Source: Macrostomum lignano
Lineage: Eukaryota
DNA: 64,000 bases
Assembly: GCA_002269645.1 (NCBI GenBank)
Contig: NIVC01002687.1
Coordinates: 62,001 to 126,000, forward strand
Direction of reading: 5' to 3'
A program made the position numbers and the translations under genes. Shown piece by piece: positions 6,644 to 30,972 of this stretch. Under the pieces are notes generated by a model that saw only the letters and a list, made by a program, of their open reading frames with translations, searched no databases and was not told the DNA's origin. The stretch's first letter is position 1; every line of letters starts with the position of its first letter.

Positions 6644-7009
6644 GGGTCTCCCTAAAACACGCCCCGCACCGCCCTGCAGCGCTACACATTAAAACAAATT
6701 GGACTATAACTAAAGACACTTCAGAATGCGTTTTCTGTTAAGCTTCAAGTTTTTATTAAATTTAGTTTTTTTACTTTGAAATATAAAATTCGGTGAACAA
6801 TAAGTGATATTAATAATAATATTAATAAAATAATAATATTATAATTAAATAATGAAAACGAGAATATAAAAAATAATAATATTTAAAAAAATAAATAAAG
6901 ATATTTATTCCATTACTATTTTAACTTTTCCTTGCAATCAAATACTGCATTGACAAAAAATGTTATAATGTGTAGCAGTTCGGGGCCCGGTGCGGGGCGT
7001 GTTTTAGGG

Positions 7010-10000
7010 GGGTCTCACTAAAAGACGGATCGGATCGGATCAGCTCGGATCGGATCCGATCCGATCCGATCCGAGTGTAACATACTAAAACAAAAACCTT
7101 AGTCTAATTCTTTTGCTTCTAAATATTTAAATACATTTAAATTTAGAGAATAAAGCCACCTAAGGACTAGAATAAAGGACACATCGTGCACGCGCAATTA
7201 ATTTTAATTCTGCAGTCTGCTGCAGCTTTATTCAAGTGGGTTGGTCGATGGGGCTTAGTTCTAGTGGTAGGCCTAGTAATATTAATAAGCTGGTTGGCTT
7301 GTATTTCTGCAAAACATTCCTAGTCTTTTTTTAGTCATTCTATTTTAAAGGCTGTTTAAATCTCTTTTCACATTCAGGATTTTGCATCCTCATACATCCT
7401 CATACTTTCACATTGAATTTTCAACTGTCTAAGGCCTTGGTAGGCCCTTCCTTACAAAAATACATTGTCTTAAACAATTGTATTTATTCCATTGACTGTC
7501 TTTAGACTATATTAATATATAATTTATATCATAAGGGAGTATATTAGACTCAGTTTTATAGTATTTCAATTTTTAGAGTATAGTATTCTGAATTTCTGGT
7601 TTTATTTAATAGGCTAATAAGTTGCTGTTGTTCATATAGCTAAGCATAAAGTATTTTAATTTTCCCATGCTATTTGATTGTCTTTACCATGTTTATATCT
7701 TTCAATATACCAAAAATAAAATCCCTCATATTTTATTGTGACATTTATTAACAATTGTTGACTGTCTACCAGTTAGGCCTATTCAGATTTACTATCTGAA
7801 GTTCCATAATTTATTGACTTTATTTCCTTCTCATTTTTCACTTTTCTCTTTTCTAATATATATATATACATTTGTTAATATTCATATTTGTTTTCTTCCC
7901 ATTTTTGCAAATCATTTACTAGGCCCTATCTACTACAATAGATCAAAACTGTACTATGCTAAATATCTAATATTTTAACCAACCTTTCAAAATACTTTCT
8001 TTTTAATATGTTATTACTTTGTAAATTTGAATTTATTATCCTTGCTTAATTTGATTTTTGCACTTTTTGAATCAAATTAATTTCCAAATTCTAAAAATAT
8101 ATGAATTATCTCATACATGTGTTATGTTAAAATTGAACTTCCAACAAAAAAAACCAAATATACTTTCTAATGTTGGCACAACAGGCACCATTTGCCTGAG
8201 CCAATCCTAACTACTACTACCACTCTACTCTTTAATTACTAGGCCTATTCATCTAGAGCAATAATGTTTCTTCTATAAGGTATATTATTGTTAAAGTATA
8301 TAGCCATAGAGACCTAGTCTAAATTCAATTCAACCCTATCTAACTTTATTCCAACTACAATCCAACTTTAATAGAACCTCTTCCAACTTTAATCAAATTT
8401 TAATCCAACATTATCCAACTCTTTCCTAAATCTTGTCACTCAATAAGGAACACTCAAAAGGAACACTTGGTAATCTTCTGTTTTCTTGTTTGCACTTACT
8501 CTCTCCATAGTCGCCTCCCTTGTCACCATATTTGGTCATTCTAGGCTTTCAACTTGAGAATCTAATCATTTCTAGGCACTCTGTGACGTCTGCTCTTGCT
8601 CAATCTGATCACCTGGACTCAAAACGAAAAAACTTGGTATTCTCTTGTTTTCTTGTTTGCACTTACTCTCTCCATAGTCGCCTCCCTTGTCACCATATTT
8701 GGTCATTCTAGGCTTCCAACTTGAGAATCTAATCATTTCTAGGCACTCTGTGACGTCTGCTCTTGCTCAATCTGATCACCTGGACTCAAAACAAAAACGT
8801 GATATTATCTTGTTTTCTTGTTTGCACTTACTCTCTCCATAGTCGCTTCCCTTGTCACCATATTTGGTCATTCTAGGCTTCCAACTTGAGAATCTAATCA
8901 TTTCTAGGCACTCTGTGACGTCTGCTCTTGCTCAATCTGATCACCGGGAATCAAAACGAAAAAACTTGGTATTCTCTTGTTTTCTTGTTTGCACTTACTC
9001 TCTCCATAGTCGCTTCCCTTGTCACCATATTTGGTCATTCTAGGCTTCCAACTTGAGAATCTAATCATTTCTAGGCACTCTGTGACGTCTGCTCTTGCTC
9101 AATCTGATCACCGGGAATCAAAACGAAAAAACTTGGTATTCTCTTGTTTTCTTGTTTGCACTTACTCTCTCCATAGTCGCTTCCCTTGTCACCATATTTG
9201 GTCATTCTAGGCTTCCAACTTGAGAATCTAATCATTTCTAGGCACTCTGTGACGTCTGCTCTTGCTCAATCTGATCACCGGGACTCAAAACGAAAAAACT
9301 TGGTATTCTCTTGTTTACTTGTTTGCACTTACTCTCTCCATAGTCGCTTCCCTTGTCACCATATTTGGTCATTCTAGGCTTCCAACTTGAGAATCTAATC
9401 ATTTCTAGGCACTCTATGACGTCTGCTCTTGCTCAATCTGATCACCTGGACTCAAAACGAAAAAACTTGGTATTCTCTTGTTTTCTTGTTTGCACTTACT
9501 CTCTCCATAGTCGCTTCCCTTGTCACCATATTTGGTCATTCTAGGCTTCCAACTTGAGAATCTAATCATTTCTAGGCACTCTGTGACGTCTGCTCTTGCT
9601 CAATCTGATCACCGGGACTCAAAACGAAAAAACTTGGTATTCTCTTGTTTTCTTGTTTGCACTTACTCTCTCCATAGTCGCCTCCCTTGTCACCATATTT
9701 GGTCATTCTAGGCTTCCAACTTGAGAATCTAATCATTTCTAGGCACTCTGTGACGTCTGTTCTTGCTCAATCTGATCACCTGGACTCAAAACGAAAAAAC
9801 TTGATATTCTCTTGTTTTCTTGTTTGCACTTACTCTCTCCATAGTCGCTTCCCTTGTCACCATATTTGGTCATTCTAGGCTTCCAACTTGAGAATCTAAT
9901 CATTTCTAGGCACTCTGTGACGTCTGCTCTTGCTCAATCTGATCACCGGGAATCAAAACGAAAAAACTTGGTATTCTCTTGTTTTCTTGTTTGCACTTAC

Positions 10001-10498
10001 TCTCTCCATAGTCGCTTCCCTTGTCACCATATTTGGTCATTCTAGGCTTCCAACTTGAGAATCTAATCATTTCTAGGCACTCTGTGACGTCTGCTCTTGC
10101 TCAATCTGATCACCTGGACTCAAAACGAAAAAACTTGGTATTCTCTTGTTTTCTTGTTTGCACTTACTCTCTCCATAGTCGCTTCCCTTGTCACCATATT
10201 TGGTCATTCTAGGCTTCCAACTTGAGAATCTAATCATTTCTAGGCACTCTGTGACGTCTGCTCTTGCTCAATCTGTTCACCGGGAATCAAAACGAAAAAA
10301 CTTGGTATTCTCTTGTTTTCTTGTTTGCACTTACTCTCTCCATAGTCGCCTCCCTTGTCACCATATTTGGTCATTCTAGGCTTCCAACTTGAGAATCTAA
10401 TCATTTCTAGGCACTCTGTGACGTCTGCTCTTGCTCAATCTGATCACCGGGACTCAAAACGAAAAAACTTGGTATTCTCTTGTTTTCTTGTTTGCACT
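7010..10498 (+). repeat. Left TIR of element D: ~1.47-kb unique arm plus ~12 x 167-bp tandem array (~8475-10498)
   Basis: Reverse complement of 19668-22205. Identical 63-codon pseudo-ORFs recur every 167 bp (8852, 9019, 9186 ... 10355). Confidence 0.95.
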
Positions 10499-10656
10499 AA
10501 CTCGGGCGTAAGTTTATATTTGGTTTATTTAAACCCATTTGCTTCCTCTGGTGACTCTAGCCTTCTGTTTGGTGTTCAGATTAATTCTAGAGAATTTGCC
10601 AGTGGAATTGAATTAAAATTTTGAATTTCGTTCAGAATTTTTACTTGAAATAATTA

Positions 10657-11775
10657 ATGGCTGCTTTCCTTTCTAAACTTTGCTTCATGGCATTTGCAAA
10701 GGACGCTTTTGCGCTATTCATTGGGCAAGGATGTTTGCCATCCCCCTTTCCTAAAGAGGACTTTGTTGTTGGAGTACGACTTATGGCTTCGGATGTTCGG
10801 GAAGCGGCTGTAACTCTTGGGTTAAAAGCGCTGAGTCGTTCTAGTATTCGTAATGTCGAAGGTCTTGAATTAAAGTACTTGACCGAAAGTGGGTTAAGCA
10901 TTGCGTTTGGTAATGGCGTCGCTATCACTCGAAAGAAGGGATCATCGACTGAATGCCGACAATCAGTTTCAGCGCGATGCAAGGCTGCGGACATGGGTCG
11001 AAAGTGGTTGGAGAGTAGCAATTGGGAGATGGTGAGTGATAGTACTTATCACCCTGCTTTTAAGCCTTGCAAGCAGCAGGTAAAACTGCACCTGCAGGAA
11101 GCTATCCGACACCTTGAGATGGCCTATTCTATTTCGAAATCACCATCCAATAGTGTTATTCGCCCAAGTTTAGTATGCGTTCGACAGGCTTTAGCAGAAT
11201 TGAACCAGATGAATGATAACCCGATTGAGATGGTGACGCTAACCAATGATGAGGTTAAGAAAGCTGAGGAAGCGAAAAAGGCTGAAGAAGCAAAGAAGGC
11301 TGAGGAAGCGAAGAAGGCTGAAGAAGCAAAGAAGGCTGAGGAAGCGAAGAAGGCTGAAGAAGCAAAGAAGGCTGAGGAAGCGAAGAAGGCTGAAGAAGCA
11401 AAGAAGGCTGAGGAAGCGAAGAAGGCTGAAGAAGCAAAGAAGGCTGAGGAAGCGAAGAAGGCTGAAGAAGCAAAGAAGGCTGAGGAAGCGAAGAAGGTTG
11501 AAGAGGCAAAGAAGGCTGAGGAAGTGAAGAAGGCTGAAGAGGCAAAGAAGGCTGAGGAAGTGAAGAAGGCTGAAGAAGCGAAGAAGGCTTGTGAAGCGAA
11601 GAAGGCTGGTAAAGCGAAGAAGGCTGAGAAAGCGAAGAAGGCTGAGAAAACGAAGAAGGCTGGTGAAGCGAAGAAGGCGAAGGAGGCTCAGGTATTGCCT
11701 GGGCCAAGACGCAGGCGTGCAGCATTTTCTGTTCTTCTACAGGAGCCAGTACAAAAGCAACTAAAGCGAAAGTAA
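10657..11775 (+). CDS. Orphan cargo protein of element D (372 aa): ~200-aa unique N-terminus plus 24 KKAEEA-type hexapeptides
   Basis: Uninterrupted ATG-to-TAA ORF. 18-bp codon repeats span 11257-11688, alternating in third positions. A possible in-frame 51-bp intron lies near 11692-11742. Confidence 0.7.
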   Translation: MAAFLSKLCFMAFAKDAFALFIGQGCLPSPFPKEDFVVGVRLMASDVREAAVTLGLKALSRSSIRNVEGLELKYLTESGLSIAFGNGVAITRKKGSSTECRQSVSARCKAADMGRKWLESSNWEMVSDSTYHPAFKPCKQQVKLHLQEAIRHLEMAYSISKSPSNSVIRPSLVCVRQALAELNQMNDNPIEMVTLTNDEVKKAEEAKKAEEAKKAEEAKKAEEAKKAEEAKKAEEAKKAEEAKKAEEAKKAEEAKKAEEAKKAEEAKKAEEAKKAEEAKKVEEAKKAEEVKKAEEAKKAEEVKKAEEAKKACEAKKAGKAKKAEKAKKAEKTKKAGEAKKAKEAQVLPGPRRRRAAFSVLLQEPVQKQLKRK

Positions 11776-11925
11776 GCTGAAGAGCATTTTTGTGAAAACA
11801 TCGCTCAATCTGATATTTAATATCACTGTGTGTACCTGGTGATTTTTTCCGATCTACTAATTGCTCACTAATAGTGCTGTTTTAATAATCTTTGTACTTT
11901 TGCCTAAGGAAATGTATCCAGAAGT

Positions 11926-12509
11926 AATATTGCATTTGACAAGCTGAGTGAGAATTTGGACATGCAAAATGAGAATCGCCCATCTGCTACATTGTATGGT
12001 CGCGAATGGTGGCTCAATTAAAGGCATAGGCACCTGGACATGTAAAATGAGAATAAGACATCCAAAATGGGAATGGATGGTTTCGCAATCAAGATTCATG
12101 CCAGTCCTGAATAAGCATTTTCTCTCTCCCTCTATCCAGTGTACATTTACATGTACATGCACATTGGTTCAATTCTCAATAATTGCTTACTGCCCCACCT
12201 TTTATTTACTCACCTCACCTGTTTTGCAGTTCAGCATCAACCCCATTTTGGCTGTACATCCATTTGCCACTCACTTCAGAGCGCCAACCCTCTCTGTGCC
12301 CCTTCTTACCTTCTTGCCCAGTTTACCCGCCCCCAAGTTTACAACAGATAAAGACACCCAGTCCCATTTTGGATGTCTAAATTCTCATTTTGCATGTCCA
12401 AGTGCCTGTGTTTATAATTGAGCCACTATTCGCGACCATATAATGTGGGAGATGGGCGATTCTTATTTTGCATGTCCAAATTCTCATTTGGCTTGTCAAA
12501 CGCAATACT
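11926..12509. mobile_element. MITE-like element, copy 1 (inside element D)
   Basis: Long TIRs TATTGCATTTGACAAGCTGAGTGAGAATTTGGACATGCAAAATGAGAATCGCCCATCT and AGATGGGCGATTCTTATTTTGCATGTCCAAATTCTCATTTGGCTTGTCAAACGCAATA. TSD unclear. Confidence 0.7.
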
Positions 12510-12775
12510 TATTCAGGGAGGCAATGGTATGACAGCTTCGTTTTCCGTACTTACTTTAACTACGACTAGATTTGGCTTTGGCTTTAGTATCAATATTTTT
12601 TACGAGTACCAATATACTAAACTATATTCTTATGCCGTTAAAGTAGTAGCTCTGAATCCTTTATGCAGCTTGTATAATGTACTTTTCGTTACTAACACGC
12701 GTAAAGTATGTGTGTAAAGTATAAAATCGTTTAAACATTCATGATTCAGGCAACACTCTGAAAGTTTGATACTAA

Positions 12776-13176
12776 TTAAGAAAATGAGGAAATAAAAACT
12801 CGTAATCTTTCACAAATGAGATGGTGATGGTGAGACAATGATGAGGCGAAGAAGGCATTTGAGAAATTGACTGTGCAATAATCAAGCAGCAAAAAATCCG
12901 ACAGCTTCACTGCGGCTTTCTCTTTTACTCTTTTACAAAACGATTTTGTAAAAGTTGGAGTTGAAGTTTTCGAACCTGTGTAAATGTTTGCTTTTTATTT
13001 TGTTTGAAGATTGGAATAATAGCACGAGTAACATTGATTTTTATCATGAAACAGTAAGCATGAGCGTTGCAAAAACAACAAAGTTTCGTGTCATTACTTT
13101 TTCCTGACAGGTGACATCTCAAATAACATTCCAGGTACTGTAATTCAGTATCAATTTTTCGTCTAACATCACTCAT
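12776..13176 (-). pseudogene. Candidate small Cys/His-rich cargo ORF interrupted by an 8-bp tandem duplication
   Basis: The 83-aa ORF MSDVRRKIDTELQYLECYLRCHLSG...LCCFCNAHAYCF stops just after GTAAAAGA x2 (+ strand TCTTTTAC at 12921-12928 and 12929-12936). Removing one copy gives a 130-aa ORF ending at TAA 12776-12778. Confidence 0.3.
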
Positions 13177-13375
13177 TTGATTCTTAAGATCACGTAACGT
13201 GTAGATGTATGGGATTATCTAGTATGTATCCCAAGTTAAAAATGAATATATAATTAATAAAAGCACATTTTCCTGCTTACTCTACAGTCTCCTATCACGG
13301 TGCACAGTCTAGGAGTAAAGATTGACCAACAAGTGCCAAAAATTTTCATTCAAGTACAGAATGTACGATGCATCT

Positions 13376-13748
13376 AATACTGCATTTGACAAGCTAAATG
13401 AGAATTTGGACATGTAAAATGAGAATCGCCTATCTGCTACATTGTATGGTCGCGAATGGTGGCTCAATTATAAACACAGGCACTTGGATATGCAAAATGA
13501 GAATTAGACTTCCAAATGGGACTGGGTGGCTTTACTTGTTGTAAACTTGGGGGCGGGTGAACTGGGCAAGAAGATAAGGAGGGGCACAGAGGGTTGGTGC
13601 TCTGAAGTGAGTGGCAAATGAATGTACAGCCAAAATGGGGTTGATGTTGAACTGCAAAACAGGTGAGGTGAATAAATAAAAGGTGGGGCAATAAACAATT
13701 TTTGATAATTGAAGTAATGTGCATGTACTGTACATGTAAATGTACACT

Positions 13749-13795
<47 letters not shown>

Positions 13796-13849
13796 GCTTA
13801 TTCAGGGCTGGCATGTCCAAATTCTTATTTAGCTTGTCAAATGCAAATA
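13376..13849. mobile_element. MITE-like element, copy 2, internally inverted relative to copy 1; carries a (GA)n tract
   Basis: Same TGCATTTGACAAGC termini. Its interior 13450-13750 is the reverse complement of ~12130-12440. Confidence 0.7.
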
Positions 13850-14306
13850 TCAAATGCATACTGAAAAAATACATTTGCATTAAGCAGTCTAGTATGATCA
13901 GCGGGAAGTTCAATTTGGACGCCTGTGAAGCGCAGTTGCAAAGCAAAAGCTATCAGGTTAGGGTTGCTAGGGTTGGGATTATAGTCGTTAGAATTGGGGT
14001 TGATAAGATGCCATTGAATAGAATGACCGACCTAAGCAGTTGTTATGACTGACAATCGTTTTGTCGGACAAATCTTTTATTGATCTTCACTTCTAAAGAC
14101 ACTATAAAGCACTGTGGTATCTATTCACACCGTTACAAATATTTTAAGTATTTAAAGTGGAGGGACAAAATTGTGCATAAAAAGTAAAAAAAGGGAGCGT
14201 AAAATCCGAATTTATATCGTAGGATGTTATGAGACACTATCTACTGTGTGACAGCTTTCTACGAATGCAAATGATTGGAACGAGCGGACAAAGCGATCGG
14301 TAAATG

Positions 14307-15484
14307 TTACCCATAAAATAGAGCGCAGCAATTGTGCTTGATGTCAGCAAAAGCGGACGACAAAGAAACTGCGCGAACGCTAGAATCGCTAATAAAGATG
14401 CATTTGTACCCATCATAAAATGTGTAGGCAGCGTAATGACCATTTTCGGCTGAGCGACCGAAATGAACAACGGCTGCGCGAAGGTTGTACGAGCGGCCGT
14501 TAAGCTGAAGACTTAGCTCCACAGGCATTGGCGAAGTTATCTTGCGCGAGCCATGTTTGGAATCGTAACTGACCCGGCCAATTCCGACACAGAGAATCTT
14601 CGATAGTGATGCCAGCGTCTGATTGTGACTGCACTGACCGGTCGTACAATTCTCACACAAAATATCCGATCGATTCGACGAAGATAACAGAGACGCACGA
14701 ATCAGATGAGGAAAGTCGATATCATCATCCCTGATAATTTGCAGGCGCAGGATCGTAATAGTTTCATTGCGGTCCAGTCGTGTAACATATCCGCACGATG
14801 AGCACACGCGCGTCGATGACGTCTGACAAGTAGAGTTTTGAAGGAGATAGAACCATGGCATAAACATAATATGCAATGCAAATAACATAATCTCGAGCAA
14901 GCTATTTGTGTCAGTGTCTGCGTATCAAAGCACGTATTAAATTACCCAATTGTGATTTAACGCAGAAAAATATTGCACGAGCATAAAATATAGAGCAGGG
15001 AAAAATAAACTTCACAGAGCAGGGAAACATACTTCGCATTTAAAGAGCTCCTCAATTTCTCGAAGTGAAAGAATTCCAGTAAGGACCTCCAGCACACAAT
15101 TTTGTTGCTTAGGATCCATTTTCATTTGATTCGCACACCATAAAAAGGCAGCGGTGTGAAATTTGATAATCACTTGTTTGTCTCGGCTCAAAATGGCGTT
15201 CAGCAAAAAGACAACCGGAGGCGATTCTGGAAAAACTGGGAGCAACGACCCAACAGCTGCTGCGATGCACTGACAGGCAGCGTTGAAGGCACAGTACGTT
15301 CCGGTTGGATTCTCAAGTCCCAAATTCAATGGTAAAGCGAGGGGCGCCGCTGGCGACTCAAGGGGCGCCGCTGACCTCACGAGGGGCGCCGCTGGCGACT
15401 CAAGGGGCGCCGCTGACCTCACGAGGGGCGCCGCTGGCGTCACGATGGATGCCGTGGCTGCCACTTTACTTGCTCTGACGGATT
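14307..15484 (-). CDS. Ubiquitin-specific protease (peptidase C19/USP) domain encoded inside element D; 5' exon unresolved
   Basis: Exons 15484-15033 and 14822-14307, with a 210-bp GTATGT...CTTGTCAG intron in phase 0. Motifs: Cys box GLENPTGTYCAFNAACQCI, QQNCVLEVL (QDAxE-like), fingers CSSC/CENC, His box YNLRAAVVHFGRSAENGHYAAY, ISDSSV, terminal ALFY. Confidence 0.85.
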
Positions 15485-16661
15485 CTGCAGTCAGGGAAAA
15501 GCAGGTTTATGTAGCTAAGTGAAGTGAGCACTAGTTTAGTGTTAGGTGCCCCCTTTGTCAGCTGTGCCCTGCGCCCTTCTGAGCTGTTGGCTGCCGCTGG
15601 CCGCAGCTCTCCCTCTCGCTCTCCCTCTCTCCCGCTCCCTTCTCTGCCTTTCCCTCCCTCGTTGTCCTTTTGTCTGCCTGCGCTCCCTTCCCCCCCCCTT
15701 TCCGGTTCGTTTGCGTTCCCAGCGTCTGAGGTTCTCCGCTCAGCCTGTCCTTGATTCTTTGTCTGTCTCCTTCCCCCCTTTTTGTGTGACTGCGTTCTTT
15801 TGGCTCGAGTCCAGCTTGTTCCGGCTGTCCTCTCTCTGTCTGGCCGTACGGGAGCGGATCACGTGCCCCAGGCGCTCTGTCTTTTTGCGCTCCCTTGTGC
15901 AATCTCGTGTGTCAGGCTCTAAATTAGGAAAGGCGTCCTTGCCTCTAAAGTTGGGGGTTCCGCGCCTGTTTCTAAATTTAGATCTGAATCACGCCAGATT
16001 GGGGGCAGTGAGAGCGGCCTTGCGTACTCTGGCGCAATGGGGAGGCTTTCACTGTATGGTGAAATCGATCCGCTACCTTATAAGTACGGGCCTCTCGTGC
16101 CTCTGGTTGGCAACCCTCTGTGAAACCTCTCGTTTACCTGTGCGTTAACCCTTCTGATAACTGCTCTCTTGGAAGTCCAGCGCAGCTTGCGCTAGGCCTT
16201 AGCCAACCTATCTGATTTCTGATCCATCTGCGACTGTGTGTCCTCGAGTGCGCTAAATCCCAACCGAACTAACAGAGACTAGCACAGTTCCTCATCCCCG
16301 CACTTGAGCCCGGCAGGACCGCTGACGAGGTGTGCACCGGTACGAACTGTCAAATCTGCACGACGTGCTGAGTTCTCGTGTCTCGTTTATTTCGCTCAGC
16401 CCGGAGTCTCCCTCACTGAAGGACAAGATCCGAGCGAGCTGGTGGCAGCACTACCTACTCTACAAGTATCCTGCGCCAGGAGACCTACCAGGCCATCGCG
16501 AGTCAACATCGAAAAAGCCTGTACATAATTGGTGGCAGCGGTGGGATTCCAAGACCTACGGCTAGGCCACCTGAGACAAATAAGAAACCACCAACACCAA
16601 CAACTATACTTCATAAGCAACGTATGAATTGTCGGCTGATATAGCAGCCTGTGGATGAAAA

Positions 16662-19379
16662 TTACGAGCGTTTAAAGTTCATTAATATTGTCATACCTCC
16701 GGTGACAAGTGAAATAAGCTGCACGGCGGGCCCTCCTGGCTGAACGCCGGTCACCATCGGTCGAGCAGGAGGCGATGCTGCGGATTTATCTAATTGCACG
16801 ATTCGTATACAGGACACCATTGCTGAACTGCCGTGCGTCGCCATCCGTTTCACGGGCACCACTGATGTCGTCCCATTGGCCATCGTGGAAACTTTTCGCT
16901 TTCCAATTGCGGAGTGTGCGTTGGAAACTGTGATAATAGGCTGCTTTTTAGCGTCATTCCGCTCGTTACGAGTCCAATGCTTCCTGCCAGGTCTACCTGC
17001 AGGTTTTCGAAAACGCTTTGAAAGCTGGCTGAGATTTTTGCTTGGTTGATTTAGCTTAAATTGGAAACCAGTCGCGCGTTTAACTGCAGCAATGTGTGCG
17101 CAATTATGTCTCAGTACACATGAACACAGCGGTGGGCTTTGTCTAAACGTAACAACGTTGCTCACTCCAAAGCTGTTTACAAGAAACTCCGACGTATCCG
17201 AAAGAAACGTGACTTTACTGTTCAAGGTGAAGTCTAGCAGACTCCCGGTTTCTGCCGCTGCTGCTGCGTCAGTATTCACAGCCGGTGCCGGGCCAACATC
17301 CCTGTCAGCAGCCGGTGACGAATCGCGGGTTGGGCCTCCTTCAGGGCCAGCAGGCGGCGAATCGCGGGTTGGACCTCCTTCAGGGCCAGCAGGCGGCGAA
17401 TCGCGGGTTGGACCTCCTTCAGGGCCAGCAGGCGGCGAATCGCGGGTTGGACCTCCTTCAGGGCCAGCAGGCGGCGAATCGCGGGTTGGACCTCCTTCAG
17501 GGCCAGCAGGCGGCGAATCGCGGGTTGGACCTCCTTCAGGGCCAGCAGGCGGCGAATCGCGGGTTGGACCTCCTTCAGGGCCAGCAGGCGGCGAATCGCG
17601 GGTTTCGGTCAGTCTGCCGCTAGCGATTATCTGCAATACTTCCTCGGGAGACTTAGTTGGAATAAGTGTGACATCGCCTGGATCCATTCTCAGCCGTTGA
17701 TACTCCTCTTTGAGTCGGAACTTTCCGGTGCCAGTGACGCCACGAAGAATGTCGTTAAAGAACGATGTCGACAGGCAGTAGAGGCTGATGAGAAGGCCAT
17801 CAAGCGGTTTCACTTGGTGTGCAGTAAACCTTTTTAGTAGCGCATTTACAGACTCGCTTTGGTTTTGCGTCATTCCTGAGATCGGTGAGTAGTGGTTACC
17901 GAGGAGCCACTTCCCGTAATATTTGGGAATTCTAGGATGTAAATTTCGTTCAAAGTACAGCACGAAGTCTTTAGACCACTGCTTCTTCAGATCGGCGTAC
18001 AATTTGTTATAATCAGAAACTCCACTGCATTTCAGGAGACAGGTCAGATCTCGTGAATAGGCGCACTCATCAGCGAGTGTTCCATTGTTGTTACGAACCC
18101 ATTGGCGTACGTCGTCTCGCAGGTGATTCCAGCAGCCAAAGAACGCAATACCTGGCAGAACTGAGTGCATCGCGTTGCGCAGCGCATGTTCAGCATCCAT
18201 CACGCAAGCCAACGGCACTTGGCTCAGTGCAGGGAGCAACTCATTGGCATATGTCCATAGTTCCTGATGGCGGGCTTCAAATTTTCTTTCGTGTATCAGA
18301 AACATGATCGGGCATACCGGGTTGTTTTCGAAGATAGTTAACCGCATGACGAGTGTCGACACATGAGCATCGGTAAGATTGAAGCCGGTATCGTACGACA
18401 AAAGTTGGGCGCTGTCTGCTAAATTCAATATGGTGTTCGCCATATCTAACAGATTTCTTTCTCCAGCAACGATTGACAGATCCGGAAACGTTCGAATAGA
18501 CCGCGTGAAATCGGGCAGCTCATAAGCAATAAGATGCACGTTAAAAAGCGCATCCTTACTCAATCGAGACACACAATCAACGGCATGTTTAGCATTGCCC
18601 ACCTGCTTCTCGTTTCTTATGCCTAACGCAGGGTGCGACTGCTCCGTTGCAGCGTGCAAACGATAGTACGTCGATGGAGACGTCCCTTCTTTCCTTAATT
18701 GCTGCGCCAATTGGCCGAGGACAGACGGACAAGTTCGAATGTACTGACTGCCATTTATGGAGTTCCCATGCGTAACTTGCTCAGGTTGCACTTGCGAGTC
18801 CCCCATGTAGTGAATCAAAGTGCGGCTAAAATTAGAGAAAATTTTGTGGGAATAAGGGAAAGGATAAGAATCGTCAATGCCTGTGTTCAAAATACCTTGT
18901 ATCGACAGTTCCGTCCGAATTAATGAGTCGGTAGGCTAGTCGTTTGAAACGGTTGTCAACTTGTCTAGGGACTGATGAAATCTTCGTTGAAAACGATAAC
19001 TTCATAAATGCTGGCTTTGATCTGAAATATGAAAAATCCCGCGTATTTAGCTAAGAGAGAAAAGTAGAACAATACAAATGGAAAAACAATAGAAAAGTAT
19101 AAAAATTGCACATGAGGTAAACTACTAAAAGACACCTAAAACAGTTGTAACTTACTTTGGCAACCTCTGGTGACCACAGTCTATCCATGAGTAGCCATCG
19201 CAACGCCAGTCGTCAATGGCATTTGACCCAGCATTCGATGTCACAAACAGAATAATAGAACCTGAGGGTGGTCGAAACTTCAGCCGCTCCTCGGATTCCT
19301 CAGTCGCTCGAATAAGCCTTAACACATCAGACGATTGTAATGCAGCATGCTGAACGCCGAGTGTGACACAGTATGACAT
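16662..19379 (-). CDS. MULE-family DDE transposase with SWIM zinc finger (837 aa if unfused)
   Basis: Exons 19379-19156, 19021-18896 and 18825-16662 with canonical GT-AG and matching phases. N-terminal motifs DWRCDGYSW, LIHYMGD and THGNS. Catalytic motifs LSYDTGF (D), CVMDAEHAL (D), CWNH (CxxH) and TQNQSESVNALLK (E). SWIM finger CSCVLRHNCAH and a basic GRPGRK motif. No stops or frameshifts. Confidence 0.88.
17320..17612. repeat. In-frame 39-bp tandem repeat (about 7 x TRDSPPAGPEGGP) inside the transposase
   Basis: TCAGGGCCAG recurs every 39 bp from 17341, between the catalytic domain and the SWIM finger. Confidence 0.95.
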
Positions 19380-19667
19380 TGCATAACGCTGTAAATAAAC
19401 AGAAAATCACATTGTACGCCTGCAAGACATGGCTCGACAACACGCAGCTGTGCAAGGCCAAGGCCGCCTAGACAGCTATGAATCAAAACAGAAAAGCTAG
19501 TTGAGGTAAGACTGGAGTGATATGGTGTTGGAGAACGCAAGATTGAAGTTGGACAAGGTGGATTGACGTTGGTTAAAGTGGAAAAACTAAGCGCGGAAAC
19601 ATTAAAACATGGCAGTGGGAAATTAGCTATGGTTGGTGCAAAAATAGAGACATTAACTAACATACAG

Positions 19668-22205
19668 AAGAATGACCAAATATGGTGACAAGGGAAGCGA
19701 CTATGGAGAGAGTAAGTGCAAACAAGAAAACAAGAGAATACCAAGTTTTTTCGTTTTGATTCCCGGTGATCAGATTGAGCAAGAGCAGACGTCACAGAGT
19801 GCCTAGAAATGATTAGATTCTCAAGTTGGAAGCCTAGAATGACCAAATATGGTGACAAGGGAAGCGACTATGGAGAGAGTAAGTGCAAACAAGAAAACAA
19901 GAGAATACCAAGTTTTTTCGTTTTGAGTCCCGGTGATCAGATTGAGCAAGAGCAGACGTCACAGAGTGCCTAGAAATGATTAGATTCTCAAGTTGGAAGC
20001 CTAGAATGACCAAATATGGTGACAAGGGAAGCGACTATGGAGAGAGTAAGTGCAAACAAGAAAACAAGAGAATACCAAGTTTTTTCGTTTTGAGTCCCGG
20101 TGATCAGATTGAGCAAGAGCAGACGTCACAGAGTGCCTAGAAATGATTAGATTCTCAAGTTGGAAGCCTAGAATGACCAAATATGGTGACAAGGGAAGCG
20201 ACTATGGAGAGAGTAAGTGCAAACAAGAAAACAAGAGAATACCAAGTTTTTTCGTTTTGAGTCCAGGTGATCAGATTGAGCAAGAGCAGACGTCACAGAG
20301 TGCCTAGAAATGATTAGATTCTCAAGTTGGAAGCCTAGAATGACCAAATATGGTGACAAGGGAGGCGACTATGGAGAGAGTAAGTGCAAACAAGAAAACA
20401 AGAGAATACCAAGTTTTTTCGTTTTGAGTCCCGGTGATCAGATTGAGCAAGAGCAGACGTCACAGAGTGCCTAGAAATGATTAGATTCTCAAGTTGGAAG
20501 CCTAGAATGACCAAATATGGTGACAAGGGAAGCGACTATGGAGAGAGTAAGTGCAAACAAGAAAACAAGAGAATACCAAGTTTTTTCGTTTTGAGTCCAG
20601 GTGATCAGATTGAGCAAGAGCAGACGTCACAGAGTGCCTAGAAATGATTAGATTCTCAAGTTGGAAGCCTAGAATGACCAAATATGGTGACAAGGGAGGC
20701 GACTATGGAGAGAGTAAGTGCAAACAAGAAAACAGAAGATTACCAAGTGTTCCTTTTGAGTGTTCCTTATTGAGTGACAAGATTTAGGAAAGAGTTGGAT
20801 AATGTTGGATTAAAATTTGATTAAAGTTGGAAGAGGTTCTATTAAAGTTGGATTGTAGTTGGAATAAAGTTAGATAGGGTTGAATTGAATTTAGACTAGG
20901 TCTCTATGGCTATATACTTTAACAATAATATACCTTATAGAAGAAACATTATTGCTCTAGATGAATAGGCCTAGTAATTAAAGAGTAGAGTGGTAGTAGT
21001 AGTTAGGATTGGCTCAGGCAAATGGTGCCTGTTGTGCCAACATTAGAAAGTATATTTGGTTTTTTTTGTTGGAAGTTCAATTTTAACATAACACATGTAT
21101 GAGATAATTCATATATTTTTAGAATTTGGAAATTAATTTGATTCAAAAAGTGCAAAAATCAAATTAAGCAAGGATAATAAATTCAAATTTACAAAGTAAT
21201 AACATATTAAAAAGAAAGTATTTTGAAAGGTTGGTTAAAATATTAGATATTTAGCATAGTACAGTTTTGATCTATTGTAGTAGATAGGGCCTAGTAAATG
21301 ATTTGCAAAAATGGGAAGAAAACAAATATGAATATTAACAAATGTATATATATATATATTAGAAAAGAGAAAAGTGAAAAATGAGAAGGAAATAAAGTCA
21401 ATAAATTATGGAACTTCAGATAGTAAATCTGAATAGGCCTAACTGGTAGACAGTCAACAATTGTTAATAAATGTCACAATAAAATATGAGGGATTTTATT
21501 TTTGGTATATTGAAAGATATAAACATGGTAAAGACAATCAAATAGCATGGGAAAATTAAAATACTTTATGCTTAGCTATATGAACAACAGCAACTTATTA
21601 GCCTATTAAATAAAACCAGAAATTCAGAATACTATACTCTAAAAATTGAAATACTATAAAACTGAGTCTAATATACTCCCTTATGATATAAATTATATAT
21701 TAATATAGTCTAAAGACAGTCAATGGAATAAATACAATTGTTTAAGACAATGTATTTTTGTAAGGAAGGGCCTACCAAGGCCTTAGACAGTTGAAAATTC
21801 AATGTGAAAGTATGAGGATGTATGAGGATGCAAAATCCTGAATGTGAAAAGAGATTTAAACAGCCTTTAAAATAGAATGACTAAAAAAAGACTAGGAATG
21901 TTTTGCAGAAATACAAGCCAACCAGCTTATTAATATTACTAGGCCTACCACTAGAACTAAGCCCCATCGACCAACCCACTTGAATAAAGCTGCAGCAGAC
22001 TGCAGAATTAAAATTAATTGCGCGTGCACGATGTGTCCTTTATTCTAGTCCTTAGGTGGCTTTATTCTCTAAATTTAAATGTATTTAAATATTTAGAAGC
22101 AAAAGAATTAGACTAAGGTTTTTGTTTTAGTATGTTACACTCGGATCGGATCGGATCGGATCCGATCCGAGCTGATCCGATCCGATCCGTCTTTTAGTGA
22201 GACCC
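19668..22205 (-). repeat. Right TIR of element D: ~6.5 x 167-bp tandem array (~19668-20740) plus ~1.47-kb unique arm
   Basis: Mirror of the left TIR. The only arm difference I noticed is (TA)7 versus (TA)6 near 21345/7857. Confidence 0.95.
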
Positions 22206-22996
22206 GTTTTAGGGAGCCTTTGTCTGAATATCTCTCGTGAAACCCTCACATTGCTCACATTTCAGACAACTGGGAATGTATATTTTAATATCTTACATAA
22301 GGCTATAGCTATAGGCTATATCGCCTATATGACTTAATAGGATTTAAAGAGTTATTTTGTTTCATATTTTAAGGCAGTGCATAAAAAATAGCTTAAGCAT
22401 GGTTAAGCCTTTAAAGAAAAATGGTTATAAGACCGCACCTAAACCGCACCTACTTTTTTAATTTCAGGGTGCGATTTTAAAATTTAGGGTGCATACGCAC
22501 ACTCTGCGCACAAAAAAAAAACCCTGACCATATAGCTGCCATATCATATCATACATTTATGATTTAATGTTCTGAGTTGAGTTCAGAGTCTTTATAGTTA
22601 GAAGTCATATTATACAACTATATCATATCCATCAAGCATCAAGTAACTTATTGATCTTCCAAGTTCCACTTTAATCTAAATAAGAAGAGAAACAAGAACT
22701 TGGGGTAAACAAAATACAACCAGGGAAAGGGCCTTCAGTGGCCCAGCCTTATCCTGTAGCCATCCATCCTCCAGGCCTCCTTGTACCCACCACCTCATGC
22801 AGAGGCAGAGCAGATTGTTAAAGTCAATAAAGTGTACATACACTACGGTGTATATACATACACAAAGCTCTCATTTCCCTCTAGCCTACCTAGCCAAACC
22901 CAATCATATACCCAAAGCCCAGACCTCACCCCAGCTTATCTTAGCAAGTTTCATTTCTCTGCCTATCCCAAGAGCCAGGGTCTGACTGCTAGTGCT

Positions 22997-24876: not shown

Positions 24877-27337
24877 ATGGCAAAGGCCAAGACAAAAGCC
24901 TCTAGGAGAGGCAATCATGCTGACAATGGGACAAAGAAAAGCAGCATTTCTGCCTGGCTCATGCCAGGTGCAGCTGTAGCAATTGTCGCCATCTGCTTTG
25001 GAATTTGCTACCAAAATTTTGCCAAAGCCACCATCAGAAATGAACAAGTTGTGCTAGCACCTGCCAATCAGTCGTTTATTGAACCAACTCAAAGGCAGTT
25101 CGAGTGTGCCAAAGCCTACACAGCCGAGCTGAGGCGCCTGCGACCCGACTGCCTGCCAGCCAGCTGCGGTCGATTCGTTCATGACGGCATCGCCACTGAG
25201 GCTGAGGCTGCGGCCCTGCTGGCACTGGCCAAGCGAGGCTTCGCTCTGGGTGGCGGATCTGGTGGGGCCACCATTCTGGATCTGCACTCCGGAGCTCTGT
25301 CTCTGGGACAGAAGTTTGTTAATGTCTACACTGTGGACGGCAGAAATGGTTAGTCACATTGCTTTCCATTATTTTCTTTTGTGTTTCAGTAGCGTTCCTG
25401 CTTGCCATTGTTGTAGTAGCTTCCATTAGTAGCTTCCCACTCTCCCTGTAGTTTCCCACTCTCTCTGTAGTTTCCCACTCTCCCTGTAGTTTCCCACTCT
25501 CTCTGTAGTTTCCCACTCTCTCTGTAGTTTCCCACTCTCTCTGTAGTTTCCCACTCTCTCTGTAGTTTCCCACTCTGTGAAGTTTCCCACTCTCTGTAGT
25601 TTCCCACTCTCCCTGTAGTTTCCCACTCTCCCTGTAGTTTCCCACTCTCCCTGTAGTTTCCCACTCTCTCTGTAGTTTCCCACTCTCCCTGTAGTTTCCC
25701 ACTCTCTCTGTAGTTTCCCACTCTCTCTGTAGTTTCCCACTCTCCCTGTAGTTTCCCACTCTCTCCGTAGTTTCCCACTCTCCCTGTAGTTTCCCACTCT
25801 CTCTGTAGTTTCCCACTCATACATGTGCAACCTCCAAAATTCGGTCAGCCGTGCGACTTAGTTTTAACAAAAATGCGACGTAGTTTTTGGCCAAAAATGC
25901 GACTTACATATAAAAAAACCCGAAAGCAAAATTAACACAACTTTGGGTAAACGGCAGGAGTAACTATGACTGTTTTATTAAGCTAAAATGCCTCGTCAGC
26001 TACTTAGTACTACTACTCGGGTTATTTTTTGGGTGGGCATTTTTGCGACTTCCTTGATTGGCCGCCAAATCGGTCGGCCGGATCGGCCGACTCGGCCGAC
26101 TGTTGCGCATGTATGTTCCCACTCTCCCTGTAGTTTCCCACTCTCCCTGTAGTTTCCCACTCTCCCTGTAGTTTCCCACTCTCTCTGTAGTTTCCTGCTC
26201 TCTCTGTAGTTTCCCACTCTCCCTGTAGTTTCCCACTCTCCCTGTAGTTTCCCACTCTGTAGTTTCCCACTCTCCCTGTAGTTTCCCACTCTCCCTGTAG
26301 TTTCCCACTCTCTCTGTAGTTTCCTGCTCTCTCTGTAGTTTCCCACTCTCCCTGTAGTTTCCCACTCTCCCTGTAGTTTCCCACTCTCTCTGTAGTTTCC
26401 CACTCTCCCTGTAGTTTCCCACTCTCCCTGTAGTTTCCCACTCTCCCTGTAGTTTCCCACTCTCCCTGTAGTTTCCCACTCTCCCTGTAGTTTCCCACTC
26501 TCTCTGTAGTTTCCCACTCTCCCTGTAGTTTCCCACTCTCCCTGTAGTTTCCCACTCTCCCTGTAGTTTCCCACTCTCTCTGTAGTTTCCTGCTCTCTCT
26601 GTAGTTTCCCACTCTCCCTGTAGTTTCCCACTCTCCCTGTAGTTTCCCACTCTCTCTGTAGTTTCCCACTCTGTAGTTTCCCACTCTCCCTGTAGTTTCC
26701 CACTCTCTCTGTAGTTTCCCACTCTCTCTGTAGTTTCCCACTCTCTCTGTAGTTTCCCACTTTGTAGTTTCCCACTCTCCCTGTAGTTTCCCACTCTCTC
26801 TGTAGTTTCCCACTTACACGGCCCAGCTAAAATTTCCCTCAACCATTTCGCCCCAACCACTCAGGAGGTCGCGGGTTCGCGCCCACCGAATCGGAGCGGC
26901 GCCTGTACGCAGGCGTGGTGAACCGCATTCGCCTGGCGGTGGCCGCCGCATTCAAAGTGTCCAACGCCGAATCGTTGCGATTGACTAAGCCGACGTTCTT
27001 CTCCAGATTAACGTCGGCCGAAGCTCGCACCCAGCACGACGAGTACTGGCACTCGCACGTGGACAAGGACACCTACGGCAGCTTTCACTACACGTCCCTG
27101 CTCTACCTGGCCAATTACGGCACAGATTTCACCGGCGGTCGGTTTCTATTTTTAGACTCCAACGGCACTTCCACGGCGTTTGTTGAGCCGCGAACTGGCC
27201 GAGTGTCAGCCTTCACGTCCGGGTCAGAGAACACCCATAGGGTTGAGCGGGTCACCAACGGGCAGAGGTTCGCGCTCACCATAGCCTTCACCTGCGACCC
27301 GGCTGCGGCAATTGATGCTAGTGCCATGGGCGGCTGA
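24877..27337 (+). CDS. OGFOD3: 2-oxoglutarate/Fe(II)-dependent oxygenase domain-containing protein 3 (314 aa)
   Basis: Exons 24877-25348 and 26865-27337 (phase 1). N-terminal transmembrane segment AAVAIVAICFGICY. Motifs TILDLHSGALS, HDEYWHSHVDKDTYGSFHYTSLLYL, FTSGSENTHRVERV and RFALTIAFTC match OGFOD3 (HxD...H...R). Confidence 0.92.
25430..26815. repeat. 19-bp minisatellite (GTAGTTTCCCACTCTCYCT) filling the OGFOD3 intron
   Basis: Direct 19-bp periodicity; the pseudo-ORFs have a 19-aa period. Confidence 0.97.
25822..26111. mobile_element. 290-bp MITE with TA flanks (Tc1/mariner-like) within the 19-bp array
   Basis: TA|CATGTGCAAC ... GTTGCGCATG|TA at 25820-25831 and 26102-26113. Confidence 0.6.
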
Positions 27338-30851: not shown

Positions 30852-30897
<46 letters not shown>

Positions 30898-30972
30898 GTC
30901 TATTTGTCTATTTTTCTGTCTGCATGTCTGTCCGTCTATCTATTTGTCTGTCCGTGTCTGTCTGTCTGTATA

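What the first reader, a model, noticed from the sequence alone, without database searches (positions are those of the whole stretch)
14307..15484. Transposon-encoded USP (C19) deubiquitinase with a complete catalytic set and a Ser-Asp third-residue motif
Seen: the oxyanion Asn and catalytic Cys (GLEN..GTYC), CxxC/CxxC fingers, catalytic His (GHY) and ISDSSV are all intact across a canonical intron. Established: protease cargo reported in DNA transposons is typically ULP1/C48 or OTU type. USP30, USP16 and USP45 use Ser as the third catalytic residue, and USP16 removes H2AK119 ubiquitin, the Polycomb PRC1 mark. Inference: the enzyme could counter ubiquitin-dependent silencing or degradation of the transposase. 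A motif match alone does not make it a USP16 relative.
Basis: partly seen in the sequence, partly recalled or inferred. Interest (0 to 1): 0.85.

Follow-up and report, generated by a model that had tools for sequence, protein, structure and literature searches.

The report
Mutator transposase fused to a deubiquitinase
A very young, apparently intact Mutator-like DNA transposon of the flatworm Macrostomum lignano encodes one spliced 1148-residue protein in which the transposase ends in a complete USP-type deubiquitinase domain, a kind of ubiquitin-removing cargo I found no report of in DNA transposons.

Summary
Window 15484-14307 (minus strand) holds two exons that splice into a USP (peptidase C19) domain: Pfam UCH E=2.6e-12, AlphaFold pLDDT 93.8, best PDB folds all USPs. 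The Cys box, four zinc-ribbon cysteines, catalytic His and a Ser at the third triad position are all present.

It lies inside a 15,196-bp element (7010-22205). The element has a perfect 9-bp target-site duplication. Its inverted repeats of 2.5-3.5 kb are identical over the outer 1,455 bp apart from one 2-bp indel.

The USP is not free-standing cargo. It has no start codon of its own and is spliced onto the transposase, giving a five-exon, 1148-aa reading frame: CG-1-like N-terminus, DDE core, SWIM finger, USP.

The same transposase-USP linkage occurs in two diverged elements of an unrelated AT-rich eukaryote. The closest transposase relative found carries Macro plus ULP1-like plus PHD domains at that position instead.

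Caveats:
- The MULE profile match is below Pfam's threshold.
- The only public gene models skip the Cys box through an alternative donor.
- Nothing links the domain to USP16 or H2A.
- Enzyme activity is untested.

Verdict: a new variant of a known kind (transposon-borne ubiquitin/UBL proteases), of moderate to high interest.

The parts
7001..7009 (.). Left copy of the 9-bp target-site duplication GTTTTAGGG
   Evidence: Identical 9-mer directly outside both TIR tips
7010..10503 (+). Left terminal inverted repeat (3.5 kb). The tip is GGGTCTCACTAAAAGA followed by (CGGAT)n. It includes a 167-bp tandem array, 12.2 copies, at 8465-10503.
   Evidence: Inverted-repeat pairs I1-I23. TRF array. The tip 24-mer occurs only at the two ends. 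The outer 1,455 bp are identical to the right arm except for a 2-bp indel.
10657..11775 (+). Second open reading frame inside the element (372 aa, (KKAEEA)n tail), convergent with the transposase gene. Whether it is a gene is unknown.
   Evidence: ORF list. Only low-complexity Pfam hits.
14307..14822 (-). Exon 5: USP fingers and palm. Zinc-ribbon Cys984/987/1033/1036, His1106 (14436-14438), Ser1122 (14388-14390), Asp1123, and the stop codon at 14307-14309.
   Evidence: Pfam UCH E=6e-10 on this exon alone. The acceptor TGTCAG|ACG is confirmed by the P0001 junction. Residue coordinates.
14823..15032 (-). Intron 4 (210 nt, GTATGT...TGTCAG), phase 0, inside the USP domain
   Evidence: The same intron position is found in relative L002.
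15033..15484 (-). Exon 4: linker with a 42-nt x2.4 repeat, plus the USP thumb. It holds the Cys box (Asn885; Cys891 at 15291-15293) and the QQNCVLEV motif. It has no ATG before the Cys. It contains two GTGAGG alternative donors (15422-15417 and 15380-15375).
   Evidence: The Cys-box exon is conserved in P0004 (52% identity) and L002 (43%).
15485..16696 (-). Intron 3 (1,212 nt, GTATGA...CTGCAG), joining the transposase exon to the USP exons
   Evidence: The junction LISLVTG|ESVRASK is present in UniProt models P0001 and P0002. Splice sites.
16697..18825 (-). Exon 3: transposase core (Asp262, Asp327, C348-x2-H351, Glu441), a 39-nt x7.3 in-frame repeat (17319-17604), the SWIM finger CSCx6CxH (aa 684-694) and a basic linker
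   Evidence: Pfam MULE PF10551 E=4e-4. Residues conserved with P0160, P0157 and P0012. Coordinates.
18896..19021 (-). Exon 2 (second half of the CG-1-like N-terminal domain)
   Evidence: Splice model with GT..AG introns of 134 and 70 nt restores one open frame. Pfam CG-1 E=6e-4.
19156..19379 (-). Exon 1, with the start codon at 19379 (first half of the CG-1-like domain)
19669..22205 (-). Right terminal inverted repeat (2.5 kb), with the 167-bp array, 6.5 copies, at 19669-20748
22206..22214 (.). Right copy of the 9-bp target-site duplication GTTTTAGGG

Best explanation
SHOWN:
- Window 7010-22205 is one complete, very recently inserted Mutator-like DNA transposon of Macrostomum lignano.
- Its single large gene (minus strand, five exons, 1148 codons, uninterrupted) encodes a fusion protein: a CG-1-like N-terminal domain, a DDE transposase core with the CxxH motif, a SWIM zinc finger, a repeat-rich linker, and a C-terminal USP-fold (C19) domain.
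- The USP domain has Cys891, His1106, Ser1122 at the third triad position, Asp1123 and a four-cysteine zinc ribbon.
- A Cys-containing USP product can be made only as part of the transposase polypeptide. Exon 4 has no start codon before the Cys, and the frame is closed upstream of its acceptor.
- The transposase-USP linkage is old. It recurs in two diverged elements of another eukaryote.
- The closest transposase relative found carries Macro, ULP1-like and PHD domains in the same C-terminal position.

INFERRED:
- The USP domain is an active thiol isopeptidase that travels with the transposase to the element's ends.
- There it removes ubiquitin (or a close ubiquitin-like modifier) either from the transposase itself or from chromatin and repair proteins around the excision and integration site.
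- This would protect transposition from ubiquitin-dependent degradation, silencing or damage signalling. It would be the same job that ULP1, OTU and VTD domains are thought to do in other transposons.
- Alternative use of a GTGAGG donor would give a Cys-less isoform, which may be inactive or regulatory.
For: - Organism: P0001 is a 100% identical UniProt protein of M. lignano.
- Element boundaries: 9-bp TSD GTTTTAGGG, and TIR tips found only at the two ends. The outer 1,455 bp of the arms are identical apart from one 2-bp indel.
- Gene model: all four introns are GT..AG and the frame is open for 1148 codons. The exon 3-4 junction and the exon 5 acceptor are reproduced in P0001 and P0002.
- USP identity: Pfam 2.6e-12, PDB alignments, AlphaFold pLDDT 93.8, Foldseek hits to USP18/46/35/30/12 at about 1e-20, column conservation.
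- Selection on the Cys-box exon: its motifs and open frame are kept at 43-52% identity in P0004 and L002-L004. The intron position is conserved.
- Ancient fusion: P0012 is a single ORF colinear with ours from the transposase through SWIM to the USP, BLASTP 2e-40. L006, from the same sample, has a transposase homologue and a USP on one strand. Window and P0012 USPs are near-reciprocal best hits within the retrieved set.
- Modular C-terminus: P0155 and P0160 are 31-35% identical in the transposase and carry Macro (1e-30), a ULP1-like region and PHD, inside a TIR element with an 8-bp TSD.
- Transposase hallmarks conserved across the clade: D, D, CWNH, E and SWIM.
Against: - No enzymatic or expression data exist. 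Activity, substrate and biological role are inference.
- The public gene models P0001 and P0002 splice out the Cys box, and P0005 also lacks it, so the catalytically complete isoform is not documented at RNA level.
- The Cys box has one extra residue between the oxyanion Asn and the Cys. The usual QQD motif reads QQN.
- The MULE Pfam match is below the gathering threshold (about 21 bits against 27.6) and is absent in L006.
- At least one genomic copy (P0002) is broken after part of exon 5.
- I could not take a census of copies in the genome.
Confidence: 0.6

Rival explanations
1. The USP module is mainly a non-catalytic product. The usual transcript uses the GTGAGG donor and lacks the Cys box. 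The remaining fingers/palm part would then act as a ubiquitin-binding or regulatory appendage, or as a repressor isoform, rather than as a deubiquitinase.
For: P0001 and P0002 both join ...PAAPL/R directly to TSSTRVC, at canonical GT..AG sites and in frame. P0005 also lacks the Cys box.
Against: The Cys-box exon keeps an open frame and its motifs (NP[TS]GTYCAFN, QNC.LE.LT) at 43-52% identity in two other lineages. Its FxCE|GT donor is conserved, which is not expected for a sequence that is always removed as intron. The basis of the automated UniProt models is unknown.
Confidence: 0.15
2. The domain is an active C19 protease but its substrate is not ubiquitin. It could act on another ubiquitin-like modifier, or cleave the transposase polyprotein in cis, as some viral DUB-type proteases do.
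For: The best structural match is the ISG15-specific USP18, and USP36-Fubi is also among the hits. The ubiquitin-tail-contacting QQD motif is altered to QQN/QNC in this clade. The linker carries repeated ...PEGGP... units.
Against: The Foldseek scores for USP18, USP46, USP35, USP30 and USP12 cannot be told apart. No LRGG-type site is present in the protein. A Gly-Gly-Pro bond is a poor USP substrate (established knowledge).
Confidence: 0.1
3. The element is not a Mutator-superfamily member. It belongs to Zisupton/KDZ or to an undescribed superfamily that shares the SWIM finger and protease cargo.
For: The MULE HMM match is sub-threshold. The closest relative, L005, has an 8-bp TSD, which is the Zisupton TSD length (PMC12730594). 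It also has a SWIM finger and a ULP1-like domain, which from my own recollection are Zisupton features.
Against: PF18758 (the KDZ transposase domain), which Zisupton proteins match (PMC9297572), never appears even at E<=10. PF10551 MULE is the only transposase family hit, and it covers 2-96 of 99 profile positions in 3 of 4 clade members. The TSD here is 9 bp. The only NCBIfam hit is IS256, the bacterial relative of MULEs (E=0.067).
Confidence: 0.1
4. It is a specific anti-Polycomb enzyme, like USP16, that removes H2AK119ub over element copies.
For: Only the Ser at the third triad position, which USP16, USP45 and USP30 share (established knowledge; the alignment is).
Against: There is no zf-UBP domain. 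No preferential similarity to Ser-type USPs is seen: USP30 E=0.46 against USP15 1e-4. Ser occurs in 8 of 60 unrelated-looking neighbours, and the P0012 fusion has Asp.
Confidence: 0.04
5. It is a host USP gene, or a Pack-MULE-style captured fragment, that merely sits inside the element and has no function for it.
For: MULEs are known to capture host gene fragments (PMC6446971).
Against: The domain is complete and confidently folded, and it is spliced in frame to the transposase. The same linkage exists in elements with only 26-29% identical transposases. The best cellular USP matches reach only about 25-37% identity over partial stretches.
Confidence: 0.02

Closest known systems
ULP1 (C48)-bearing Mutator-like elements of plants (KI-MULEs/Kaonashi) and other ULP1-carrying DNA transposons
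   Same: A Mutator-type element that carries a papain-fold protease of the ubiquitin/UBL system alongside or fused to the transposase. The presumed role is to counter host modification-based control. (This comparison rests on my own knowledge of the literature.)
   Different: The protease here is C19/USP, not C48/ULP1. The host is an animal (a flatworm). The domain is obligatorily fused to the transposase by splicing.
MuDR-6_HM of Hydra, with an OTU domain (Dupeyron et al. 2019, PMC6446971, Table 1)
   Same: An animal MULE with a deubiquitinase-class cysteine protease listed as an extra motif.
   Different: OTU (C85) fold rather than USP. The terms 'ubiquitin', 'protease' and 'peptidase' do not occur in that paper's main text. 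Among the extra motifs visible in the passages shown are OTU, SET and PMD.
Helitron/Helentron VTD and OTU deubiquitinases (Erven et al. 2022, PMC9741609)
   Same: Transposon-encoded DUB domains embedded in the transposition protein, with catalytic residues conserved in autonomous copies. They are proposed to protect transposition proteins from proteasomal degradation. Biochemical activity has been shown for VTD.
   Different: A different transposon class (rolling-circle RepHel), a different DUB fold and a different active-site layout.
The sister transposon family found here (L005/P0155/P0160, ENA ERZ18545498)
   Same: Transposase 31-35% identical over about 480-520 aa, with the same N-terminal block, DDE/CxxH core and SWIM finger. 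The TIR tips have a similar design. It also carries a C-terminal accessory module.
   Different: The accessory module is Macro plus ULP1-like plus PHD instead of USP. The TSD is 8 bp. The element is 4.8 kb with short TIRs.
Zisupton/KDZ DNA transposons
   Same: Multi-exon transposase genes (PMC9297572). From my own recollection, also a SWIM finger and a ULP1 protease.
   Different: Zisupton gives 8-bp TSDs (PMC12730594) and matches Pfam PF18758 (PMC9297572). This element gives a 9-bp TSD and shows no PF18758 match.
Human USP30, USP16 and USP45 (USPs with Ser as the third triad residue)
   Same: Ser at the position aligned with the catalytic Asp/Asn. USP30 structures are among the top fold matches.
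   Different: No specific sequence affinity, no zf-UBP domain and no transmembrane anchor. The resemblance is a single residue.

Membership tests
USP / peptidase C19 (Pfam PF00443) | Profile match above the curated threshold | tested here: met
   47.4 bits against a cut-off of 23.9, E=2.6e-12 on the spliced product. Exon 5 alone gives 39.6 bits.
USP / peptidase C19 (Pfam PF00443) | Cys box with the catalytic Cys and the oxyanion Asn | tested here: met
   GLENPTGTYCAFNAACQC aligns with GLSN-LGNTCFMNSAIQC of USP15, with one extra residue before the Cys. The aligned columns are N 45/46 and C 48/49. The Pfam envelope itself starts only at profile position 120.
USP / peptidase C19 (Pfam PF00443) | His box with the catalytic His, and a polar third residue followed by the conserved Asp | tested here: met
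   GHYAAY...ISDSSV aligns with GHYTAF...FDDSSV. His 61/61 and Asp1123 59/60. The third position is Ser here; the column reads D26/N25/S8.
USP / peptidase C19 (Pfam PF00443) | Fingers-palm-thumb fold with a CxxC...CxxC zinc ribbon | tested here: met
   AlphaFold2 pLDDT 93.8 and pTM 0.90. The Foldseek top 50 hits are all USPs, TM 0.77. Cys984/987/1033/1036 lie in columns that are at least 90% conserved.
USP / peptidase C19 (Pfam PF00443) | Isopeptidase activity on ubiquitin | not testable with these tools
   This needs Ub-AMC and Ub-PA assays with a C891A control.
Mutator superfamily (MULE/MuDR) | Target-site duplication of about 9 bp (8-11) | tested here: met
   Perfect 9-bp GTTTTAGGG on both sides.
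Mutator superfamily (MULE/MuDR) | Terminal inverted repeats, often long, with subterminal repeats | tested here: met
   Arms of 3.5 kb and 2.5 kb, 98-100% identical, containing 167-bp tandem arrays.
Mutator superfamily (MULE/MuDR) | Transposase matching the MULE domain profile (PF10551) | tested here: inconclusive
   This is the only transposase family hit, and it covers 2-96 of 99 positions. But it scores 20-21 bits against a cut-off of 27.6 (E=4e-4). It is found in 3 of 4 clade members and is absent in L006. The IS256 NCBIfam model scores E=0.067. The AlphaFold model of the core was unusable (pLDDT 44).
Mutator superfamily (MULE/MuDR) | D, D, CxxH and E catalytic signature, followed by a SWIM zinc finger | tested here: met
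   LLSYD262TGF, VMD327AEH, C348WNH351, NQSE441SVN and C684SCx6CxH694 are conserved between this element, P0160/P0157 and P0012. The assignment of these motifs to catalysis rests on the published MULE signature (established knowledge).
Zisupton / KDZ superfamily | Match to the KDZ transposase profile PF18758, and an 8-bp TSD | tested here: not met
   No PF18758 hit at E<=10. The TSD is 9 bp. The criteria come from PMC9297572 and PMC12730594.
USP16/USP45-type USPs | N-terminal zf-UBP domain and closest similarity to USP16/45 | tested here: not met
   No zf-UBP hit anywhere in the protein. The best named matches are USP15, USP12, USP35, USP46, USP38 and USP36/42-like proteins.
Pack-MULE (captured host gene fragment) | Non-autonomous element carrying a fragment of a host gene | tested here: not met
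   The element has an intact transposase gene, and the USP domain is complete and fused in frame. The linkage is conserved in distant relatives.

The most novel reading that the evidence does not exclude
One lineage of Mutator-like transposases carries interchangeable 'eraser' enzymes at its C-terminus: USP (ubiquitin) in Macrostomum and in an AT-rich eukaryote, and Macro (ADP-ribose) plus ULP1-like (SUMO) plus PHD in the sister family. Ubiquitin, SUMO and ADP-ribose are marks that signal DNA breaks and drive silencing. The transposase may therefore bring its own eraser to the cut site, to blunt the host response to excision and integration or to escape degradation. In the flatworm element, the choice between two 5' splice sites would switch the eraser between a Cys-containing and a Cys-less form.
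Probability: 0.25. Interest if true: 0.8.

Novelty: new variant of a known kind. Interest (0 to 1): 0.62.

Why it matters
Transposons are known to carry ULP1, OTU and VTD proteases, yet what these do for the element is still largely unknown. This element adds the largest DUB family (USP/C19) to that list, and in an unusually clean form. The USP is physically part of the transposase. The copy looks able to move: identical TIR ends, an intact TSD and an intact 1148-codon frame. The host is a laboratory flatworm with transgenesis and abundant stem cells and germline. The sister family, with Macro and ULP1-like domains at the same position, gives a natural comparison of which host modification each element has to erase. 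Together they make the question 'why do DNA transposons carry ubiquitin/UBL proteases?' directly testable with point mutants. There is also a practical point for annotation. The public gene models for this family are truncated and omit the catalytic Cys, and one of them is named simply as a host 'ubiquitinyl hydrolase'.

Tried and rejected
- The search for homologous proteins with the whole 742-aa transposase ORF returned nothing. The 13-residue tandem repeat saturated the 8000-candidate word list.
- The profile search with the repeat-trimmed fusion returned only P0155.
- The look-up of encoding contigs could not find P0001, P0002 or the window's own exon-5 ORF. No other M. lignano genomic copies could be fetched, so no census of copies was possible.
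- AlphaFold2 of the transposase core with a 4-sequence alignment gave pLDDT 44. I did not use it for fold search.
- NCBIfam gave only a marginal IS256 hit.
- Pfam found nothing in the L006 transposase or in the N-terminal region of P0017. I therefore do not call P0017 a transposase.
- PDB sequence search with the CG-1-like N-terminus found nothing.
- Ten long proteins among the USP hits were checked for transposon domains and had none. BLASTP showed that, of the 150 listed USP hits, only P0012 has a homologous transposase.
- Naming of the nearest USP hits gave mostly unnamed environmental sequences, so no orthogroup could be assigned.
- My by-eye guess that ORF 52411-53193 is hAT-like got no Pfam support.
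- Literature searches for USP/C19 domains in transposons found no report. That covers only the open-access library searched.
Full report
**What is at the coordinates**

On the minus strand, two open frames (15464-15012 and 14900-14307) flank a short stop-rich stretch. Exon 5 alone matches Pfam UCH/USP (PF00443) at E=6e-10. Joining FKCE|GTATGT (donor at 15032) to TGTCAG|ACG (exon start 14822) gives a 274-aa domain. This domain scores 47.4 bits (E=2.6e-12) against a cut-off of 23.9.

phmmer against PDB aligns the His box and ISDSSV with GHY...FDDSSV of USP15. This puts Ser1122 at the third triad position. The Cys box aligns with GLSN-LGNTCFMNSAIQC, with one extra residue before the Cys.

An AlphaFold2 model built on 63 aligned sequences has pLDDT 93.8 and pTM 0.90. 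Its best 50 PDB fold matches are all USP catalytic domains, including USP18, USP46, USP35, USP30 and USP12, at E about 1e-20 and TM 0.77.

In that alignment the catalytic Cys, the catalytic His, Asp1123 and the four zinc-ribbon cysteines fall in columns that are at least 90% conserved. The third triad column reads D26/N25/S8.

**Organism and public models**

The spliced domain finds a 100% identical UniProt protein of Macrostomum lignano (A0A1I8IIT2, 'ubiquitinyl hydrolase 1', P0001) and a second, diverged and interrupted copy (P0002).

Both models start inside the upstream transposase frame and read ...LISLVTG|ESVRASK...PAAPL|TSSTRVC.... This confirms two of my junctions: transposase exon to exon 4, and the acceptor of exon 5. 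It also shows that these models use a different donor, a GTGAGG inside a 42-nt tandem repeat (15422 in P0001; a second identical copy at 15380). That donor removes 130 codons, including the Cys box.

**The element**

The region is bounded by inverted repeats 7010-10503 and 19669-22205. These contain 167-bp tandem arrays of 12.2 and 6.5 copies. The tip sequence GGGTCTCACTAAAAGACGGATCGG occurs only at the two ends. The tips are flanked by a perfect 9-bp duplication, GTTTTAGGG. The outer 1,455 bp of the two arms differ by only a 2-bp indel. This is a complete, very young insertion of 15,196 bp.

**The gene**

Upstream of the 742-codon frame (18890-16662) there are two small exons. With GT..AG introns of 134, 70, 1,212 and 210 nt, the five exons (19379-19156, 19021-18896, 18825-16697, 15484-15033, 14822-14307) give one uninterrupted 1148-codon frame.

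Exon 4 has no ATG before Cys891, and the frame is closed just upstream of its acceptor. A Cys-containing USP can therefore be made only as the C-terminal part of the transposase.

The domain order is as follows:
- a CG-1-like N-terminus (Pfam PF03859 E=6e-4, below threshold);
- a core whose only transposase-family match is MULE PF10551 (E=4e-4, 21 bits against 27.6);
- an in-frame 39-nt x7.3 repeat;
- a SWIM-type CxCx6CxH finger;
- a basic linker;
- the USP domain (one search gives the residue coordinates).

**Relatives**

An exhaustive phmmer search of 1.84 billion representatives gave 166 hits at E<=1e-3. The closest are listed below.
- Other M. lignano fragments. P0004 is 52% identical and holds the Cys-box exon GLPNPTGTYCAFNAASQC. 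P0005 is 62% identical.
- Logan contigs from three SRA runs (P0003/P0151; L002-L004), 44% identical. They have both exons, the same FxCE|GT...CAG|T intron position and VSDSTV. An open frame, conserved motifs and a conserved donor at this divergence argue that the Cys-box exon is coding. This bears directly on the exon-skipping models.
- P0012 (ENA ERZ25039471), further away. It is a single 729-aa ORF colinear with ours from the second catalytic Asp through SWIM to a complete USP (BLASTP 2e-40, 24% identity). It has Asp at the third triad position.
- A second contig of that sample (L006). It carries a transposase homologue (29% identical to ours, 36% to P0012) and a USP on the same strand, 4 kb apart.

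Within the retrieved set, the window USP is the second-best hit of the P0012 USP. Of the 150 listed USP hits, only P0012 has a homologous transposase.

The closest transposase relative found is P0155/P0160 (31-35% identity, E about 1e-70). It carries a Macro domain (1e-30), a ULP1-like region (PDB 6dg4, E=2.5e-4) and a PHD finger at the C-terminus. It sits in a 4.8-kb element whose TIR tips resemble ours, with an 8-bp TSD.

The D, D, CWNH, E and SWIM residues are conserved across all of these transposases.

**Classification**

The Mutator assignment rests on four things: the 9-bp TSD, the long TIRs, the DDE/CxxH/SWIM arrangement, and a consistent but sub-threshold MULE profile match found in 3 of 4 clade members.

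Zisupton/KDZ was considered because of the SWIM finger, the protease cargo and the 8-bp TSD of the sister family. However, the KDZ profile PF18758, which Zisupton proteins match (PMC9297572), is never hit. In addition, Zisupton makes 8-bp TSDs (PMC12730594), whereas this element makes 9 bp. I rate Mutator-superfamily membership at about 0.75-0.8.

**Function**

Shown: fold, catalytic residues, fusion to the transposase, conservation of the linkage, and a modular C-terminus in the clade.

Inferred: the domain is an active isopeptidase that acts where the transposase acts. It would remove ubiquitin from the transposase, or from chromatin and repair factors at the element, and so favour transposition. 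This parallels what has been proposed for the biochemically active VTD domains and the untested OTU domains of Helitrons (PMC9741609), and for ULP1 in plant MULEs (my own knowledge).

Nothing supports a USP16-like or H2AK119ub-specific role. There is no zf-UBP domain. There is no preferential similarity to Ser-type USPs. The Ser is also not shared by the P0012 fusion.

Features that could alter activity or specificity are the one-residue insertion before the Cys and the QQD to QQN change.

**Novelty**

The Mutator review table lists OTU, SET and PMD among the extra motifs shown, and the terms 'ubiquitin', 'protease' and 'peptidase' do not occur in its main text (PMC6446971). My full-text searches found no report of a USP/C19 domain in a DNA transposon. 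Only the open-access library was searched, and Repbase reports are not covered.

I therefore rate this a new variant of a known kind, not a new kind. It is interesting because the copy looks active, the host is experimentally tractable, and the sister family offers a built-in comparison.

Noticed in passing
window 19379-18896 (minus; exons 1-2): The transposase N-terminus matches the CG-1 DNA-binding domain of CAMTA transcription factors across almost the whole profile (PF03859 positions 7-114 of 116, E=6e-4, 19.9 bits against a cut-off of 23.5). The same block (DWRCD.Y.W ... L.HYMGD) is present in the L005 relative. I found no paper linking CG-1 to transposases and no PDB relative.
   Followed up: partly
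L005 9196-13972 (ENA ERZ18545498, contig atg000041l): A sister transposon family. The transposase is 31-35% identical, but the C-terminal module is Macro plus ULP1-like plus PHD instead of USP. The TIR starts GGCCGGGACTATTT, followed by (CGGAA)n. The TSD is 8 bp, TCAGTTCC. There are several copies in that assembly (P0155-P0163).
   Followed up: partly
window 15338-15439 and 17319-17604: There are in-frame tandem repeats inside the coding sequence: 42 nt x2.4 (AAPLVRSAAPLESP) and 39 nt x7.3 (TRDSPPAGPEGGP). The first carries two GTGAGG motifs. The UniProt models use this donor to skip the catalytic Cys.
   Followed up: partly
window 1-995 and 59405-60329: A second, much larger inverted-repeat pair. 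653 nt are 100% complementary, and each arm has an 84-bp tandem array. The arms are 59 kb apart, and the left arm is cut by the window start. The Mutator-like element lies between the arms. This may be the ends of another long-TIR element or two inverted copies of one.
   Followed up: no
window 10657-11775 (+): A 372-aa ORF inside the element, convergent with the transposase gene, ending in a long (KKAEEA)n repeat. It has no family match. Whether it is a second element gene is unknown.
   Followed up: partly
window 11918-13728: A palindromic block inside the element: inverted repeats of 144 nt (92%) and 137 nt (86%), with mirrored ORFs. It may be a nested foldback or MITE insertion between the second ORF and the USP exons.
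   Followed up: no
P0017 (ENA, 1402 aa, contig of 28.7 kb): One protein of an unidentified eukaryote combines a USP domain (E=2.7e-19) and a ULP1/Peptidase_C48 domain (E=1.3e-11), after a 400-aa N-terminal region with no family match.
   Followed up: partly
window 7010-7075 and L005 9196-9291: The TIR tips of the window element and of the sister family share a design. A short unique tip (GGGTCT.A.TAAAA.A) is followed by pentanucleotide repeats, CGGAT here and CGGAA in L005. These may be transposase-binding sites.
   Followed up: no
window 25429-44012: The 20 kb downstream of the element is almost entirely short-period tandem arrays (periods 4-43 nt, many hundreds of bp each). This accounts for most of the long 'ORFs' there.
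   Followed up: no
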